DNA of 63,543 nt, the filler included, from Octopus bimaculoides (lineage: Eukaryota): assembly GCF_001194135.2 (NCBI RefSeq). It is 8 parts of 6 records of this genome, joined end to end, with 100 filler letters (N's around TTAATTAATTAA, not from the genome) between each part and the next. Parts side by side here need not be neighbours in the genome. Positions count along the whole stretch, not along the records: positions 23,900 to 37,570 come from NC_068999.1; 7 more parts are not named here. One strand, written 5' to 3'. Shown in pieces: positions 26,805-35,415 of the stretch. Made by a program: the position numbers and the translations under genes. Under the pieces are notes generated by a model that had not been told where the DNA came from, did not search any database, and saw nothing but the letters and a program-made list of their open reading frames with translations. Position 1 is the first letter of the stretch. The number at the start of each line of letters is the position of its first letter.

Positions 26805-28462
26805 CTCAGTCTTTCGTCATTGGCTCTGTGAGGCCCAACGTTCGAAGGTCATGCTTCATCACCTCATCCCATGTCATCCTGGATTCCTTCAACTGTTTGG
26901 GAGTGGCACTTCTTCATACAGCTCTCCTCATCCATCCGTAGTACACGACCATACCAGCGCAAACGTCTCTCTTGCACGCCACATCCGATGCTTCTTATGT
27001 CGAATGTTTCTCTCAGGGCGCTTACACTCTGTCGTGTGTGCACACTGACATTACACATTCAGTGGATGATGCTAGCTTCATTTCTTTTGAGCCTACACAT
27101 GTCCTCCACAGTCACGGCCCATGTTTCACTGCCGTGAAGCATAGCAGTTCATATACATGCATCATACAATCTCTGAGTGAGAGGCCCTTTGTCACCAGTA
27201 GGGGTAGAGGCTTTCTAAACTTTGCCCAGGCTATTCTTATTCTAGTGGTAACACTCTCAGAGCATCCACCCCCATTATTAACTTGGTCACCTCAGTAGCG
27301 TGAGCTATCAACTACATCTAGTTTCTTCCCCTGGAGTGTGATGGTATCTGTTTTCTGAGCATCTGTGGTGTTTATTTCCCCTGTGCATCTGCTGCTCACA
27401 AAAGCTATCTTCCCGGTTAATCTTCCTTTGATGTTGCTGCACCTTTTATGTGTCCATAGCTTACACTGGGTACATCTTATGGAGTTTCTCCCTACACGTT
27501 TTCTACAGATCAAGCAGGGCCACTTACCTGAGGGTGTGTGTGATGAGTTTACCTTCCTACCTACTAGAACTTGGGTCTTTGCTACATTGACTTTAAGGCC
27601 TTTTGATTCTAAACCTGAAATTTCTTCTCTAGTTCACGTAGTGATTCTGCTAAGAGGGCCGGGTCATCAGCATAGAGGAGCTCCCAGGGGCAACCCATCT
27701 TGAATTCCTCTGTTATTGCCTGGAGGACTATGATGAATAAAAGGGCTGATTCTTTGTAGACCCCTACTTCTACCTAGAATTCTTCACTATACTCATTGCC
27801 AATCCTAACCTTACTAACGGCCTCCCTGTATAGGGCCTGTACAGCCCTTATTAACCATTCGTCAATCCCTAGTTTCTGCATCGCCCACCAGATGAGGGAT
27901 TGGGGGACCCTGTCAAAGGCTTTCTCCTAGTCCATAAAAGCTAAGTATAGGGGTTTATCTTTAGCTGGGTATTTCTCCTGCAGTTGCCGTACCCAGAATA
28001 TAGCATCAGTGGTGCTTCTACCTGGCACAAAACCGAACTACATCTCATCTAAGCAGATTCTTTCCTTAATGAGATGGGCTGTGACCCTCTCCGTGACCTT
28101 CACCAGTTTGATACCCCTGTAGTTATTTCTATCTAGAGCATCACCTTTACCCTTGTAGCAGTTGACTATGGTGCTGCTACATCAGTCATTGGGTATGACT
28201 CCATCATGTACTACCTGGTTTACAATGTGGGTGACTAGGCCATAGCCCACACCACTAGATATTTTAAGCATCTCAGTAGTGATTCCTGATGGGCCGGGGG
28301 CTTTTCCTAGTTTCATACCCTTAATTGCTTTATCCACCAGGGTGCTGTCTATTTGGATAGTTGGTCCCTCAACTGGGTCAAAATTTGGCAGGCTCTCCTC
28401 TTCCCATTCATTCTCCACATTCAGCAGTCTTTCATAATGGCTTCTCCAAGCCTCTTTCTTTT
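26805..28462 (-). mobile_element. RTE-clade LINE, decayed reverse transcriptase region (both ends truncated)
   Basis: Translates to AWRSHYERLLN...KAPGPSGIT...NNYRGIKL...EKAFDRVP...PWELLYADD...VVDSSRY...RIRIAWAKF with stops and frameshifts. Confidence 0.93.
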
Positions 28463-28639
28463 GAGAATATAGGGACTATATCAGAAGCCATTATAGTAGA
28501 ATTAGAAAATAGCAGAGGGAAGAGATCGTGTAGTTGTGGGTCAGAAGCTGGAGTATGTCTGAGTGGTTCTTTCCTGGATGAATGTTAAAATTGTAATACA
28601 TACATATGAAACACATGTGTTTTAATATGAAAATGCTTA

Positions 28640-30454
28640 ATTTTTTATTTACCAGACTGGTTTAAAATATGGAAAAAAAGAAAATAAAAGAAAAGAAAAT
28701 GATGGTGTTTATATTTTATTTAGATTTCAGTTTGTTTAAAGTCTTCATTTGTAATTTTTTTCCAATTTAAAAACATTTTTGAATATTATTTTTTTTTTAT
28801 TCATTTTATATTTTTTTCTTTACATAGAATACAAAAAAAAAATTTTGCAAAATAAAAATAAAAAAAAAACGTTTTCTCCCCCCTCCCACTTAAGACAAAA
28901 AAAAAAAAGACCAGGCATACTGCATCACAACTTATAAACTGGAAGGTTAGGTTTCAATACTTGCCAAACAATGATCGGGGATTGGGAGGAGAAGAACAAG
29001 CTTAAATGATATATTTTTTTTGTATCGTTCACTTTTTCACCTAAAATAGGTTTGTTTCATATCTTTTTTTCGAGGGAATGATAAATGAGCAGGGAGGTGG
29101 GGGTTATTATAACTCCCACCACCCCTCCACACAAACTAGTAAAATAATAACAACTAGATTTGCACCGAGTGTAGTAAACATTTGTTTAAACAAACATGCC
29201 AACATTAGACCTCTCTCTCTCTCTCTCTCACAGACAGATTGACAAAACACACAGCCACATAACTAGAAAGAAGTGACCAATACTATACAGCAGATTCACA
29301 CAACATAGATGGATTGGTGACGGAGGGGGGGGGTTAAGGGTGCATAGACAGCCCCCCCCCCCCCCCGCCACATCCTATGTTGCTTTTATGTACAAACCTC
29401 ACACCGCAATCAATCAGTTTACTCTATTCCCTCCTTCCCTCTTGGGGTACTGACTCACATCTTCTTCAGACTAACCAATAAAGCATACCGCCCCCCCCAA
29501 AAAACCCAACCAACAACCTAGATGAAGGGATTAAAAAAAAGATGAAAACATCCTGCAACCATTTGCCCAACTGTTCTGTGAAAAAGCTGCAGAAGAAATA
29601 ATGATGTTTTTTACATAGGCACAAAAATTAGGCGGAAGGGAGTTAGACAACACCATCAACCCTCGGACTTGAGTGGTACTTTATTTTATCAACCTTGGAA
29701 GGATGAAAGGCAAAGTTGACCTCGGGAGGATTTGAACTCAGAATGTAAAGAGCGAGAAGAAACACTGCAAGGCATTTTGTCTGATAAGGAGTAAAAGAAA
29801 AATCAGGTGATGGAGAAGGAATTTTAATATGTCTAAAACGTCTAAGTTTATAATTACACCAGAGGATGATATAACGAGTGACATTCAACTATTAAAGGAG
29901 TAGATTTAATCTTGTCCCAGAACACATGCTTATTCAATCTTCTTTGAATGAAGAAGTTATACAGAAATGAAGCTATCTTAACAACCTCTAATATTTCTAA
30001 AGATTTTATTTTCTCATCTTTTGACAATTATTTTCATAAGTTAGCATGGCTGGGATGGGCATTACTGACACCAAGTAGGTTTGTTCTGTTGCAGTTGAAT
30101 GTTCCTATGACTGCCAACTTCCAAACATAAGAACACTGCAGATTAGTCAACTAGACACAGTTATGGAGTTTGCTCAGAATAACAATAAAATGACTGCAAC
30201 TATAAGGTTTAAAGTCACGATACTCCAAGTAGTGGTGATAATAACAGAAGCAATTAAACTGAGCTTTAACCAACCACTCTCTAATTAATCTTTTAAATAT
30301 ATAATACCTAAACTGAGAAGTTGGCAAAAAAAAGTGTATTAAATTTAGTAGAATATATCCTTCAAAATGACATTTGCTAAAACCTAAGAAAATGTTGACC
30401 TCAATACATACACACACACACACGCATATATATATAAATATATATGTATGTATG

Positions 30455-30508
<54 letters not shown>

Positions 30509-32756
30509 TACAGAGACACACATAAAATGACTGCTGCATACATGTGAAAAAGCTTAGAATAGTGCCACAGTGAATCAAAAGCTTCAAATGAATAAATAAA
30601 CTGGATTAAATTAGTGGAGTACTTTTTCTCCCATTTATATAACAAAACACACACACACATCATAATATAAAACAAACAACTTTTGAGGCAAGTATTATCA
30701 AGAATAAGTCCAACAATACGAACACAAAAACAATATATGAAGTGATATTAAAGCAAGCTAAAATATACCTTAACAGGATCATTAAGATGTGAACGTCGAT
30801 GTATTTCTATTAAATAAAACACAGCTCAGGTGACTGATAAAGCCAGCATACTGGTAATGGCACAGCTGTGACAATAAATGGCAGAATGAAAGTAAGGAAT
30901 TGTTGACAGAAGTTTGGGGAGTAGAGGAGAGAAAATTAAGCAACTTGTGCGAAGTAGTCCCAATAATTTTAAGGGACTAGCAGCATCTGATTCTTTTGAG
31001 AAATAATCAGTTTTAAATAATAATAGCTGATGTTACATTCTGGCTCCAGTGGTTTCAGGCATAAACAGTGGGAGCAAGGGAGAGAATGCTTTCTCATCTT
31101 AAAAAACAGAAGGAAGCCAACAAAAATCTAAGACCAGTTCATTGACAAAAGGAAAGCGAATCACAGTAAATGTTTAATAGAAAAAAATTCTTATAAAAAA
31201 AAAAAAAAGGCCATGATACAATTTCTGAAATGATTATTTAACAGGATGGTGAGTGTTAGGAAAAAAAACGAAGATGAAGTGACTGTGTTTGTGTGTGTGT
31301 GTGTGTGTGTAAAAAGGTGTAAGCATTTTAAATCATGATCAAAGTTACAACTGCATACAATTCACACGTGGCTGTACACATACAATACTCACTCGCAATG
31401 TATTATACACACACAATATGTTTCTGAGCTACATGGAAGTGTAGAAACAAAGTAATAGTTGAATATAGACCAACACTGTTACCACTGCCATCTTAATTAA
31501 GCCAATACTCACACCTAAAGTGATTAATAACAAATGAACATGTTGGCAAATACTGTGAGAGAAACTGGTAGTGTTTGTGTTGGTAACATGTGACAGGCAA
31601 GCTGGAGCAATCGGTAGGTTTCTACAGCTAAGGTTTTTAGGGATGGGGTTGTTCATGACATCAAAGAGGAGGTAAAAAAAACAAGAGGTGCAAAGCATCT
31701 TTGTACAGGGCAGGTGGTTGCTATAGCAACATCAGCAAGTATAGACAGGTTATACAAGGTTGAACTAAAAGGTGCACTACTTAGGGTCAGGGATGGGGGG
31801 GGGTAACCAAAGAAAACAAATTTAAATTAAAGTATCATTCAAAATAAGAGAAGATTCTTGCTTGTAATATTGTAATTTAGGTCAACCCTTCTACACAAAA
31901 AGGACTGTTTTATTGTGCTTTTGGGGTTGTTGTTTCTTTTTGGCTATAGCCCAAACATTTAAGGGCAGAGCAGAGCAACATATTACAGCGAGATATATTA
32001 GGGGTCAGAAAATTAGGTTAGGTGAAACTGGATTATGTCTGAGGTTTTGGTAATTGATTCAGTTTATAAGAGAGCAGAAAAAAATACCCCAATTATTTAA
32101 GAACTTAGTGGCGTTTCTGAACACTATTTAGAACGTTAATAGTTTTTATTGTCATCAGGTTAAAACCATGACCTCCCCATTTTTTTCTGTTTTCTTTTTA
32201 TTGTTAAAATGTTTGAGATCTCAGATCACTGCACCAAGCTTCTACTTTTATTCTGAAAGCTTGATTCCAATAAACTGTTCAATTATCTTTTTGTTTCTTA
32301 ATGGAGTCCATTGCACTGTACACAGAAAATAACAATTTTGGTAATTTTTCAATCATGGATAATTGAGCTATCTTTGGAGCTTATTTATATCATTTTTCAA
32401 GAGATTTATGGACAGTCTTGGTAATAATGCTTTGTTCCCTGCAAAACAAAGGAATATTACAAAATTTTGATTTACTTTCGTACAGAAACGCCCACCAAGT
32501 TCCCTACCAGAAAGTGAGATTGTATGACCCTCTCCCTCACCACCACTCAACTCTTACATTTCAGTTGATGGCGTTGATTGATGTATACTGAAATACAACA
32601 ATTTCACTGTTTATGTGAATACGATTCCAAAGAAGGGAGGTGGTGGGGGACAGGAAAAAAAGATTATACTTCATTGTCGTCGTCGTTATCATCATCATCA
32701 TCATCATCAAGGTTATAAGTAGGACAATTTCACACAATATTTTGGCCAGACACAAC
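28640..32756 (-). other. Probable long terminal 3' UTR of Pak
   Basis: Acceptor tttttttttgttttttttaaatctgctttgaatttgtag at 32757. About 4 kb of repeat-poor sequence, U-tract-rich on the minus strand, ending in clustered minus-strand AATAAA hexamers near 28644, 28715 and 28796. Confidence 0.5.
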
Positions 32757-32952
32757 CTACAAATTCAAAGCAGATTTAAAAAAAAACAAAAAAAAAACAC
32801 AGTCTCTATCCACATTATCGTGTCGTTTGTATTTTAAATAAATTTTAGCATCACTAAATTGTTTTATTTTGAGACTGTTCGTTTCTTCGAGTGGAAATCA
32901 CGAGAGGAATATTATAATTGTAATAGTGAAATTAAAAAAATAAAAAAATTAC

Positions 32953-33090
32953 CCTGGCAGTGTAAATAAAAAGAAAACAAATAAAGAAAACTATCTTAGA
33001 CCTGGTATCTAGTCAGTGAAGATGATTTCAAATTTCATGATCAGAAGAACATCTCTTTAAGATGACCAGCAGATGTGACTTTGTTATCTG
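32953..33090 (-). other. Candidate non-coding (3' UTR) exon of Pak
   Basis: Acceptor tcaattttag(cag), donor AGG|GTAATT. Confidence 0.45.
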
Positions 33091-33324
33091 CTAAAATTGA
33101 TTTGAGTTTGTGACAAGAATAAAAAATGAACAACTAAATATAAAAATGACATAGAAATAAAACAGAGGAGTAAGATAGAAGAAAACTACTATACTAATGT
33201 ATATATAATGTATGTATGATAAATATGTAATGTGTGTATGTGTGTGAGTTCTGAAAACAACTTAAGTTTCATGTTCAAGTGAAATAAATTTGACTTGGTT
33301 TGGGTTAAACTAGAGTCTGCTTAC

Positions 33325-33543
33325 CTTCAATCATCAGCTTATCTCAGTGCATACCACAAAATGGCTGGTGGTAATTTTAAGAAAAATCACAAAACTCAGT
33401 ATCTGTGAGTAAGTGAAAATATTGTGACAGGGGCGATAACTCAGATTTTGAAGTAGGTGAGGAGGCTCTAGTGCAACCCAAACCAAATCAAATATCTTCC
33501 CTGGAGCATGAAACTGGAGTTGCTGTCACAATCATTCAGTTTA
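33325..33543 (-). other. Candidate non-coding (3' UTR) exon of Pak
   Basis: Acceptor atatttttcctatacag, consensus donor AAG|GTAAGC; no open frame through it. Confidence 0.6.
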
Positions 33544-34155
33544 CTGTATAGGAAAAATATTTTTAACTCCTCTCAAAAGTATGTATGTGAGTGTGTCTGT
33601 TATGAGGTGATGAAGAAGAGATAGAAATGTGAAGTAGCACTATATAATTATTGTTTATTGTATGTGTGTGTGTATGTAAATGCCATCTATGTAGGTGTTC
33701 AAAATGTGTGTGTATGTATTCTTCTTTCCACTGGAAGGGAACAAAAGCAAATACCAGCATATATGTTGTGGATGTGGCTAAGATGTTCCATTTGAAGGGA
33801 ACACCTCTCCATACTTTGTGTTGCTGTATGTGTGATGTGTTAAGGAGGGGAGTAAAACAGTCCCGTGGAGTGGCCAGAACACAACAACCAAGCACACAGC
33901 AAAGGTACGCACTTTATCATACTATGTCTTCTGTTATATTTCCTTCACTGTCATGTCTGTCGAAAATGAGAGAGAGAAAGAAAAAGAAAAACTGATGAAA
34001 TGGTATAAAACAAAAACATGTCAGTTTAGAATGTGTGTTGTGCTTGTATTGATATGTGCATGCATGTAATATATTTCCATATGTAACATCACTATCAAGG
34101 TATTGAGGCTTTTAGTGGAGTTCACTCAGTAGTAAACATCTGGACGAGAGCTTAC

Positions 34156-34389
34156 ATTTTCTCAAAACATCTCATGGTACAAGAGGAGATTTATGAACAC
34201 ATTACATTTCACTTGTCTCTGCTATTGCTATTTAATGCAAGGAACACTTTTCTGGTCATGCTGTCAGGTGGAACACCAAATCCCATTGGAGGTTATATTC
34301 TGGAGTCTTCTTTATCCTAATACAAGACGAAGACCAGTCAATAACAATGTGTTATTGGAAGGGACATACAAAATGAAATTGAGAACCTA
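34156..34389 (-). other. Candidate non-coding (3' UTR) exon of Pak
   Basis: Acceptor tctatcccctattatctatag(tag), donor AAT|GTAAGC; stops in all frames; same strand as Pak. Confidence 0.5.
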
Positions 34390-34499
34390 CTATAGATAAT
34401 AGGGGATAGATTCCTGGTATGGTGTGATCAAATGCATCTCAATTGCAGCCAATTGAAATTAAAATGAAATTTTTCTTATAGATGGTCAGGTTGGACATC

Positions 34500-34870
34500 A
34501 ACCACTTTGCTTTCAATAGTTTAGGAAGGACTAAAGAATTGTGTCTAATATAGCCCTGAGTCAACCAATGCCTTATGAATAAATTTGGTAGATGGAAACT
34601 GTGCGGAAGCCCAATGTTTATATGTGTGTATAAACACACACACACACACATATGTATGTGTTGTTTTTGTATTTGTCTATCACAGCTTAACAACTGGCAT
34701 TGATTTGTTTGTGTTCTTGTAACTTTAGCAGTTTGGCAAAGGAAGGCCAACAGAATAAGTACTACAAATTTAAAGTAAATACTGGGATTGATTTGGTCAC
34801 TGAAACCTTTCAAGGTGGTGCCCCAGTATGGTCACGGTCAAAAGACTAAAACAAATAAAAGAATAAATAA
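34500..34870 (+). mobile_element. SINE family A copy, CpG-decayed, inside the first putative 3' UTR intron of Pak
   Basis: Family A motifs with most CG converted to TG/CA. Confidence 0.75.
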
Positions 34871-34918
34871 AACTAACTTACCACTGGATTGTAATTCCAT
34901 AATTTATAACAAGTTCTC

Positions 34919-35002
34919 TCAATGTGTTTTCTGTGCTTCTTTTGCAGCCAATATTAGTGGCACTAGACTAGCCAGTGGTTTGGCTAGACGGAGGAAAGAA
35001 TG
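34919..35002 (-). CDS. Pak: Group I PAK kinase last coding exon: HSFLRLAKPLASLVPLILAAKEAQKTH-stop
   Basis: Matches the PAK C-terminus pattern HxFLxxAKPLxSLxPLIxAAKEA; acceptor caattcttttctgattctgttgcag; TGA at 34921-34919; exon continues 37 nt to donor GTG|GTAAGT at 34882/34881. Confidence 0.95.
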   Translation of the reverse strand, partial: HSFLRLAKPLASLVPLILAAKEAQKTH

Positions 35003-35277
35003 CTGCAACAGAATCAGAAAAGAATTGAGATATAAAAAGGAAAATACCAAAATATATTGAAAAACATGATAACAAATTTTTGCTGTTGTTGTTTTTAGTC
35101 ACAGGCCTGTAAAACAATGAGGGCTGAGGACTGAGATATGTGGTGCAAGAAGACCTGGCCACCACAACAGAACTGAGATCCTAAAACCAAGGTGCCATGT
35201 AAACATACTGGCAGTGCTGATATAAAAGGTCAGGAGGGGGTGATGCGAGGGGAAATAATTAGATAAAGTGATGTTAC

Positions 35278-35415
35278 CTTAAGTAATTCTGATGCTGATG
35301 CTCGTTTATCAACATCAACCTCCAAACATTTGTCCAAGAAATCCTGGAAGACCGGTGACAACTTGTGTTTCTCTTTGATTTCTGGTTTACCATTTGTTGC
35401 TATTAAGTACAGTGC
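35278..35415 (-). CDS. Pak: Group I PAK kinase exon: [46 protein letters not shown]
   Basis: Diagnostic group [13 protein letters not shown] motif; 138 nt, phase 0-0; acceptor ccattattccattaacag, donor AAG|GTAACA; joins in frame to both neighbouring exons. Confidence 0.96.

What the first reader, a model, noticed from the sequence alone, without database searches (positions are those of the whole stretch)
28640..34918. Pak appears to have a multiply spliced 3' UTR: candidate NMD-controlled kinase mRNA
Seen: donor GTG|GTAAGT 37 nt after the Pak stop, then same-strand AG/GT-bounded non-coding blocks at 34389-34156, 33543-33325 and 33090-32953, then a strong acceptor at 32757 into a ~4 kb U-rich tract. 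The 33325/33090 junction would also create a short in-frame downstream ORF, MIEADNKVTSAGHLKEMFF. Established: junctions more than ~50-55 nt past a stop trigger EJC-dependent NMD, and some neuronal mRNAs such as Arc use this for translation-coupled decay. Inference: the first junction is NMD-neutral but later ones (~270 nt and beyond) are not, so alternative 3' UTR splicing could switch Pak mRNA between stable and short-lived forms.
Basis: partly seen in the sequence, partly recalled or inferred. Interest (0 to 1): 0.75.

Follow-up and report, generated by a model that had tools for sequence, protein, structure and literature searches.

The report
Conserved stop-proximal intron in octopus Pak 3' UTR
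The octopus Pak kinase gene very probably has one ancient intron starting 37 nt after its stop codon, as oyster Pak mRNAs demonstrably do. The three extra non-coding exons and the NMD switch built on them look like chance splice-site matches, so the finding is mostly ordinary.

Summary
The piece carries the last three coding exons of Octopus bimaculoides group-I Pak on the minus strand, with the stop at 34921-34919.

- The donor GTG|GTAAGT 37 nt after the stop is conserved in Argonauta hians at +39, and alignment collapses right after GTAAGTT.
- In oysters, 9 of 9 RNA-seq contigs splice exactly 37 nt after the Pak stop, directly into one continuous terminal exon.
- Downstream similarity to Argonauta resumes only at 32985-32740. 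That stretch holds two candidate acceptors, with exon starts at 32953 and 32756.

The three internal blocks are not supported.
- Nothing in 34881-32986 aligns with Argonauta.
- The acceptor at 33090 is poor, and block 2 lies in an inverted-repeat element.

Best model: a single stop-proximal 3' UTR intron of about 1.9-2.1 kb, then a terminal exon of about 4.1-4.3 kb ending at AATAAA 28649.

I could reach no octopus RNA data, so lineage-specific cassette exons are not excluded. Interest is low.

The parts
36806..36905 (-). Pak coding exon ([33 protein letters not shown])
   Evidence: Translation. 86% identical to Argonauta L001 97418-97551. The product is identical to O. bimaculoides XP_014779005.
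35278..35415 (-). Pak coding exon (ALYLIATNG...ASELLK)
   Evidence: 94% identical to Argonauta L001 98093-98255.
34882..35002 (-). Last coding exon: 84 nt of CDS ([27 protein letters not shown], stop TGA 34921-34919) plus 37 nt of 3' UTR
   Evidence: Aligned to Argonauta. The same 84 + 37 nt layout is RNA-verified in oysters.
34876..34881 (-). 5' splice site GTAAGT of the 3' UTR intron (GTG|GTAAGT, PWM score 9.7)
   Evidence: GGTAAGTT is conserved in Argonauta at +39, and the alignment breaks down immediately after it. An oyster donor at exactly +37 is used in 9 of 9 RNA contigs.
32954..34881 (-). Proposed single 3' UTR intron. The minimal version ends at the conserved ..TTTACACTGCCAG acceptor; the alternative version runs on to 32757.
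Evidence: There is no alignment between 34881-32986 and Argonauta 99487-102359.
32946..32985 (-). Conserved island A: TTTATTTGTTTTCTTTTTATTTACACTGCCAG|GGTAATTT.
   Evidence: 85% identical over 40 nt to Argonauta 102360-102398, E 1e-6. Scored as an acceptor: Octopus 6.2, Argonauta 3.3. Scored as a donor: Octopus 6.0, Argonauta -0.9.
32778..32862 (-). Conserved island B (core 32862-32817: ACAATTTAGTGATGCTAAAATTTATTTAAAATACAAACGACACGAT) followed by a long U-rich tract
   Evidence: E 8e-12 to Argonauta 102769-102857. It is either exonic 3' UTR (if the acceptor is 32953) or an intronic element upstream of acceptor 32756.
32740..32758 (-). Candidate acceptor C: ..gaatttgtag|GTTGTGTCTGGCCAAAA (AG at 32758-32757, exon start 32756)
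   Evidence: PWM score 6.1, with a U-run upstream. TGTCTGG(A)CCAAAA is conserved in Argonauta, where a strong acceptor (score 9.2, 85% pyrimidine) lies 12 nt upstream of it with exon start at 102914.
28630..32756 (-). Terminal 3' UTR exon, about 4.1 kb (4.3 kb if it starts at 32953). T-rich, with microsatellites and a repeat fragment.
   Evidence: A conserved island at 31611-31571 matches Argonauta 105476-105519. The ORFs inside it have no Pfam match. The 3' end is inferred, not shown.
32145..32252 (-). Cluster of three AATAAA hexamers: a possible proximal poly(A) site region
   Evidence: Inference only.
28644..28649 (-). Distal AATAAA followed by TGTGTTT; the likely end of the long 3' UTR
   Evidence: A LINE fragment begins about 60-200 nt further on.
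34156..34389 (-).
   Evidence: Acceptor score 4.2, donor score 7.1. No Argonauta counterpart. Site quality is at chance level.
33325..33543 (-). It overlaps an inverted repeat with arms 33249-33326 and 33455-33531.
   Evidence: The sites are good (acceptor 8.4, donor 11.2), but nothing is conserved. The donor sits in one arm of an inverted repeat that is 77-82% complementary, which suggests a MITE-like insertion.
32953..33090 (-).
   Evidence: Acceptor score -1.5. The Argonauta equivalent of its donor scores -0.9.

Best explanation
This is the 3' end of the Octopus bimaculoides group-I p21-activated kinase (Pak) gene. The last coding exon carries 84 nt of CDS and then 37 nt of 3' UTR, and ends in a strong 5' splice site (GTG|GTAAGT). 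My inference is that this donor is spliced as one intron of about 1.9-2.1 kb (34881 down to 32954 or 32757). It would join a single long terminal exon that runs to the AATAAA at 28649, possibly with an earlier poly(A) site cluster near 32.2 kb.

The only exon junction after the stop would then lie 37 nt downstream. An EJC deposited about 24 nt upstream of that junction sits roughly 13 nt past the stop. That is at the edge of the terminating ribosome, so the mRNA belongs to the 'stop-codon-proximal 3' UTR intron' class. It is not an Arc-like distal-junction NMD target.

Shown here:
- all sites are present at the stated coordinates;
- the donor, and two candidate acceptor regions, are conserved in Argonauta;
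- oyster Pak mRNA splices at +37 into one terminal exon;
- the internal blocks are at chance level and are not conserved.

Inferred, not shown: that the octopus donor is actually used, which acceptor it pairs with, and where the transcript ends.
For: Gene identity: the three exons translate to a 106-aa C-terminus identical to O. bimaculoides PAK XP_014779005. It has PLILAAK, whereas O. sinensis, O. vulgaris and Argonauta have PLIMAAK.

Donor conservation: Argonauta has AGG|GTAAGT at +39 (score 10.2). The preceding UTR stretch ATGGAA..ACAATCCA is conserved, and the alignment is lost right after GTAAGTT.

Orthologous RNA evidence: six full-length and three partial oyster RNA-seq contigs from nine SRA runs all join ..TTTATAAG (37 nt after the stop) to GTTGTATAAC. 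They skip a 428-nt GT..AG intron (L003 18865-19292). They then match the genome without a break for more than 1 kb.

Chance: about 0.002 donors this strong are expected in a 5-nt window at +37.

Conservation pattern: there are no hits between Octopus 34881-32986 and Argonauta 99487-102359. Colinear islands appear at 32985-32946, 32862-32778, 32794-32740 and 31611-31571. Each candidate acceptor follows a pyrimidine-rich tract in both species.

Internal blocks: they are at chance level, the acceptor at 33090 scores -1.5, and block 2 lies in an inverted repeat.
Against: No octopus transcript could be examined, for three reasons. The Octopus loci exceed the 100-kb limit. No octopus RNA contigs were found.

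Argonauta is a distant octopod, so non-conservation cannot exclude exons specific to the Octopus lineage.

The acceptor is not resolved between 32953 and 32756.

The gastropod Littorina has no donor within 100 nt of the stop, so the intron is not universal in molluscs. The 37-nt UTR segments of oyster and octopus are not significantly similar in sequence (p about 0.13), so homology of the intron rests on position alone.

Several RefSeq mRNA variants encode the same octopus Pak protein. UTR isoforms therefore exist, but I could not tell whether they differ at the 5' or the 3' end.
Confidence: 0.65

Rival explanations
1. The +37 donor splices to 34389, and three non-coding cassette exons (234, 219 and 138 nt) are included or skipped before the terminal exon at 32756. 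That places junctions 270 nt or more past the stop and switches Pak mRNA between stable and NMD-sensitive forms.
For: All eight sites exist. Donor 33325 (score 11.2) and acceptor 33543 (score 8.4) are individually strong. Island A overlaps donor 32953. Several mRNA variants encode the same protein in RefSeq.
Against: Equally good AG..GT pairs are as common on the antisense strand and in shuffles. Acceptors 33090 (-1.5) and 34389 (4.2) are weak. None of blocks 1-2, nor the block-3 acceptor, has a counterpart in Argonauta. Block 2 sits in an inverted-repeat element. The orthologous oyster mRNAs have a single 3' UTR intron.
Confidence: 0.07
2. A two-intron variant. Island A is a real donor that ends a short conserved non-coding exon. 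The 196-nt stretch 32952-32757 is then a second 3' UTR intron, which puts a constitutive junction more than 50 nt after the stop.
For: Island A is conserved on its upstream side plus about 8 nt past the GT, like the first donor. In Octopus AGG|GTAATT scores 6.0, similar to the real coding donors at 6.3-6.5. Acceptor C is conserved and is strong in Argonauta.
Against: The Argonauta equivalent, AGT|GTATTT, scores -0.9 as a donor. No plausible conserved acceptor precedes island A in either species: Octopus 33090 scores -1.5, and Argonauta has a (CAGA)n-like purine-rich tract there. The conserved part is a T-rich tract ending in CAG, which is the signature of a 3' splice site. Oysters have no second intron.
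Confidence: 0.12
3. There is no 3' UTR splicing in octopus. The roughly 6.3-kb region is one unspliced 3' UTR, or the mRNA ends earlier. The conserved GGTAAGT would then be a U1-binding or other regulatory element rather than a used splice site.
For: Sequence alone cannot prove that the site is used. Octopus 3' UTRs can be long, though the median is only 350-380 nt (PMC9699675). Littorina Pak lacks the intron.
Against: The consensus donor is perfectly conserved at the same distance from the stop as an RNA-verified oyster intron. Conservation is lost sharply right after it and returns only about 1.9 kb downstream at pyrimidine tract + AG sites. Only one AATAAA and one ATTAAA lie in the first 2 kb after the stop.
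Confidence: 0.1

Closest known systems
[quoted passage not shown] 2020, PMC7310861)
   Same: The junction lies 37 nt after the stop, and its position is kept across distant species (octopods +37 and +39, oysters +37). [quoted passage not shown]
   Different: This case is in molluscs and in a Pak kinase, and use of the site in octopus is not shown. No PAK gene was found in that paper's held supplementary text. Whether this particular intron confers any NMD sensitivity is unknown. That paper reports that the 36-50 nt subclass is the most UPF1-responsive in human cells.
Arc-type distal 3' UTR introns that drive EJC-dependent, translation-coupled NMD
   Same: A neuron-relevant gene with a spliced 3' UTR.
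   Different: Arc's junctions lie well beyond 50-55 nt from the stop (from general knowledge; ARC is used as the distal control in PMC7310861). Here the only supported junction is at +37, and the candidate distal junctions are at chance level and are not conserved.
Oyster (Crassostrea/Magallana) Pak gene 3' end
   Same: It has the same last-exon layout: 84 nt of CDS plus 37 nt of UTR, a GT donor, and one terminal UTR exon. The terminal exon starts with GTTGT in both oyster and Octopus site C.
   Different: The oyster intron is 428 nt against about 2 kb in octopus. The oyster 3' UTR is about 1.1 kb against up to 4.3 kb. The UTR sequences are not significantly similar.

Membership tests
Stop-codon-proximal 3' UTR intron (proximal 3'UI) | An intron is removed from the 3' UTR of the mature mRNA | not testable with these tools
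   No octopus transcripts were reachable. In the oyster orthologue the feature is met: 9 of 9 RNA contigs are spliced.
Stop-codon-proximal 3' UTR intron (proximal 3'UI) | The distance from the stop codon to the exon junction is less than 50 nt | tested here: met
   37 nt in Octopus, 39 nt in Argonauta and 37 nt in oysters.
Stop-codon-proximal 3' UTR intron (proximal 3'UI) | A canonical, conserved 5' splice site with loss of conservation downstream of it | tested here: met
   GTG|GTAAGT scores 9.7. GGTAAGTT is identical in Argonauta, and the alignment ends there.
Stop-codon-proximal 3' UTR intron (proximal 3'UI) | An identifiable 3' splice site partner | tested here: inconclusive
   There are two conserved candidates, with exon starts at 32953 (score 6.2) and 32756 (score 6.1). 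Sequence alone cannot choose between them.
Distal-3'UI EJC-dependent NMD target (Arc-like) | At least one exon junction 50-55 nt or more downstream of the stop in a mature isoform | tested here: inconclusive
   The candidate sites exist, but they are as frequent on the antisense strand and in shuffles. They are not conserved in Argonauta and are absent from oyster mRNAs. RNA data are needed for a firm answer.
Distal-3'UI EJC-dependent NMD target (Arc-like) | The transcript is stabilised when UPF1, SMG1 or the EJC is lost, or when translation is blocked | not testable with these tools
   This needs an experiment.
Group I p21-activated kinase (PAK1-3 / Pak) | The C-terminal kinase-domain sequence is orthologous to PAK1-3 | tested here: met
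   The 106 aa are identical to O. bimaculoides PAK isoforms. The cluster carries Pkinase and PBD domains.

The most novel reading that the evidence does not exclude
The +37 position has been held for more than 500 million years (oyster to octopus) just inside the 50-nt rule. It falls in the 36-50 nt zone where vertebrate proximal 3' UTR introns show the most UPF1 sensitivity. The intron could therefore be a tuned, weak EJC/NMD or translation-enhancing rheostat for Pak. In Octopus it might be combined with occasional inclusion of lineage-specific intronic exons, such as block 2 or the island-A exon, that push the mRNA into full NMD.
Probability: 0.1. Interest if true: 0.55.

Novelty: new member of a known kind. 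Interest (0 to 1): 0.2.

Why it matters
If the single-intron model holds, Pak joins the known class of genes that keep a stop-proximal 3' UTR intron over very long evolutionary times. The bivalve-cephalopod example has an almost invariant distance of 37-39 nt. That is a small but clean data point for the idea that the position of such introns is under constraint: close enough to the stop to avoid strong NMD, yet retained.

It does not support a new NMD-based switch for a neuronal kinase in cephalopods. It also shows that AG/GT-bounded 'exons' read out of AT-rich octopus sequence carry little information unless they are conserved or seen in RNA.

Tried and rejected
1. Octopus transcripts through protein searches.
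- A 106-aa query found no cephalopod hit. The tool appears to list only hits 0.85-1.75 times the query length.
- An X-padded chimeric query found the O. bimaculoides cluster P0122.
- The O. bimaculoides, O. sinensis and O. vulgaris gene ranges are 109-125 kb, so no DNA was returned.
- The non-longest isoforms are not on record.
- A 215-aa query aimed at partial RNA-derived ORFs returned only oysters and other taxa.

3. Chiton and Haliotis loci were not on record, because the proteins I had were isoform X2.

4. Oyster versus octopus UTR similarity was not significant. The 37-nt segments gave p about 0.13, and the terminal-exon start gave p about 0.7.

5. Rfam on 28400-35100 gave only sub-threshold hits (best 61.9 bits against a gathering score of 90), mostly mir-297/466-type matches on the microsatellites. 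There is no snoRNA or miRNA in the intron.

6. Pfam on the longest UTR/intron ORFs gave no matches. An alternative coding terminal exon is ruled out, because exon e2 spliced to block 1 starts with TAG in frame.

7. Global MAFFT of the acceptor region was uninformative because of large indels, so I used local alignments instead.

8. The supplementary text of PMC7310861 held no PAK entries.

Full report
**What is in the piece.** On the minus strand lie three coding exons: 36905-36806, 35415-35278 and 35002-34919. Together they translate to [10 protein letters not shown]...[33 protein letters not shown].
- A padded query retrieved the octopod PAK cluster.
- The C-terminus is identical to O. bimaculoides XP_014779005. 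O. sinensis, O. vulgaris and Argonauta hians have PLIMAAK where the window has PLILAAK. The window is therefore O. bimaculoides Pak or a very close relative.
- The stop is TGA at 34921-34919.

**Checking the observation.**
- Donors: GTG|GTAAGT 37 nt after the stop, AAT|GTAAGC (exon end 34156), AAG|GTAAGC (33325) and AGG|GTAATT (32953).
- Acceptors have exon starts at 34389, 33543, 33090 and 32756.
- The 19-codon ORF exists.

I scored the sites with a generic metazoan weight matrix.

| Site group | Scores |
|---|---|
| Real coding donors | 6.3 and 6.5 |
| Real coding acceptors | 6.6, 6.9 and 10.6 |

Such sites are abundant in this AT-rich sequence.

| Thresholds | Sense strand | Antisense strand | Dinucleotide shuffles |
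|---|---|---|---|
| Weakest real coding sites | 14 | 8 | about 6 |

A chain of AG/GT-bounded blocks is therefore not evidence in itself. Only the first donor is rare. Three sites scoring 9 or more occur in 6.3 kb, so about 0.002 are expected in a 5-nt window at +37.

**Comparative evidence in octopods.**
- The Octopus species' loci could not be fetched, because the gene ranges are 109-125 kb.
- The Argonauta hians locus came back as L001. Its CDS ends at 99447 and it has a 10-kb 3' flank.
- The three coding exons align at 78-94%.
- The alignment of the last exon runs through the stop and the UTR stretch ATGGAA..ACAATCCA, and ends exactly after GGTAAGTT. Argonauta has AGG|GTAAGT at +39 with score 10.2. 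Conservation up to a donor, with loss right after it, is the classical picture of an exon-intron boundary.
- Between Octopus 34881-32986 and Argonauta 99487-102359 there is no alignment at all, even in a small search space.
- Colinear similarity resumes in four islands:
  - A: 32985-32946, TTTATTT..ATTTACACTGCCAG|GGTAATTT, 85% identity, E 1e-6.
  - B: 32862-32778, E 8e-12.
  - A fourth island at 31611-31571.
- Blocks 1 and 2 and the acceptor of block 3 have no counterpart in Argonauta.
- Block 2 overlaps an inverted repeat (arms 33249-33326 and 33455-33531, 77-82% complementary). This suggests a MITE-like insertion.

**RNA evidence from an orthologue.** The oyster Pak protein P0142 is present in two genome records (L002, L003) and in hundreds of Logan RNA-seq assemblies.
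- Six full-length transcript contigs (L004-L009) and three partial ones (L010-L012) come from nine different runs.
- All nine read TGA + 37 nt (..TTTATAAG), joined to GTTGTATAACTG.
- In the genome these two points are separated by a 428-nt GT..AG intron (L003 18865-19292).
- After the junction the contigs match the genome continuously for more than 1 kb.
- The last coding exon has the same layout as in Octopus: 84 nt of CDS plus 37 nt of UTR.

So the intron at +37 is real and apparently constitutive in oysters. It is followed by a single terminal exon, and it sits at the same distance from the stop as the conserved octopod donor. The periwinkle Littorina has no donor within 100 nt of its Pak stop. 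Amphioxus has only a candidate at +6. The intron is therefore shared by bivalves and octopods but is not universal. The UTR sequences of oyster and octopus are not significantly similar, so homology rests on position.

**Which acceptor.** Two conserved candidates exist.
- Site A (exon start 32953) is a T-rich tract ending in CACTGCCAG. As an acceptor it scores 6.2 in Octopus and 3.3 in Argonauta.
- Site C (exon start 32756) follows a long U-run. It scores 6.1 in Octopus and 9.2 in Argonauta, where about 100 nt upstream of it are free of AG.
Read as a donor it scores 6.0 in Octopus but only -0.9 in Argonauta, and neither species has a credible acceptor upstream of it.

I therefore read island A as a 3' splice site, or as an element near one, rather than as a donor. 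This step is inference.

**Transcript end.** The AATAAA at 28649 is followed by TGTGTTT and then by a degenerate LINE fragment (RVT_1, E 1e-13, with in-frame stops), so it is a plausible distal end. Three AATAAA at 32252-32145 could be a proximal site. No known RNA family lies in the region.

**Mechanism.** The best-supported structure is one stop-proximal 3' UTR intron.
- An EJC is deposited about 24 nt upstream of a junction. This is established knowledge and was confirmed for zebrafish in PMC7310861.
- With the junction at +37, the EJC sits about 13 nt past the stop, where a terminating ribosome should displace it. By the classical 50-55 nt rule the mRNA is not an NMD target.
- There is a caveat. 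Gangras et al. report that some proximal 3' UTR introns, especially those 36-50 nt from the stop, do respond to UPF1/EJC loss. A weak effect cannot be excluded.

**Verdict.**
- It is unsupported in its main claim.
- No octopus RNA was available, so Octopus-specific cassette exons remain possible, at roughly 10-20% overall.
- The feature is a new member of a known kind and is of low interest.

Noticed in passing
window 28420-27600 (minus strand); also ORF 27292-27513: A degenerate non-LTR retrotransposon fragment lies just beyond the Pak 3' end. Its reverse-transcriptase domain (Pfam RVT_1, E 1e-13) carries several in-frame stops. It is followed by a PHD/C1-like zinc-finger ORF that scores below the Pfam cut-off (22.3 bits against 24).
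   Followed up: partly
window 33249-33326 and 33455-33531: An inverted repeat of about 78 nt per arm, 77-82% complementary, lies inside the proposed 3' UTR intron. It looks like a MITE-type insertion.
   Followed up: partly
window 36310-36250 and L001 102974-103039 (also L001 96516-96582): The same repeat family occurs in the Octopus intron between the first two coding exons and inside the Argonauta region that aligns with the Octopus terminal UTR exon. In Argonauta it appears as an insertion of about 400 nt.
   Followed up: no
window 30520-30400, 34683-34614 and 33722-33658: TA/CA microsatellites give sub-threshold Rfam hits to mir-297, mir-466 and similar families on both strands. These are repeat artefacts, not miRNA genes.
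   Followed up: yes
window 29380-29305: A run of about 17 G, followed about 20 nt later by a run of C (GGCGGGGGGGGGGGGGGGC...CCCCCCCC), lies in the terminal UTR exon. It could form a strong hairpin. It draws several weak Rfam miRNA-type hits well below threshold.
   Followed up: no
O. vulgaris record GCA_951406725.2 (no DNA returned): A separate 126-aa 'gene' is annotated on the same strand 4.1-4.5 kb downstream of the Pak stop. That would fall inside the equivalent of the long terminal 3' UTR exon. It may be a spurious ORF called on Pak 3' UTR transcription.
   Followed up: no
L013 (Littorina saxatilis) and L014 (Branchiostoma belcheri), just after the Pak stop: Littorina has no donor-like site within 100 nt of the stop, so the +37 intron seems absent there. 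Amphioxus has only AAT|GTAAGC at +6.
   Followed up: partly
tool behaviour: the search for homologous proteins listed only hits between about 0.85 and 1.75 times the query length. A short exon-derived query therefore cannot retrieve full-length orthologues. Padding the query with X residues worked around this.
   Followed up: yes
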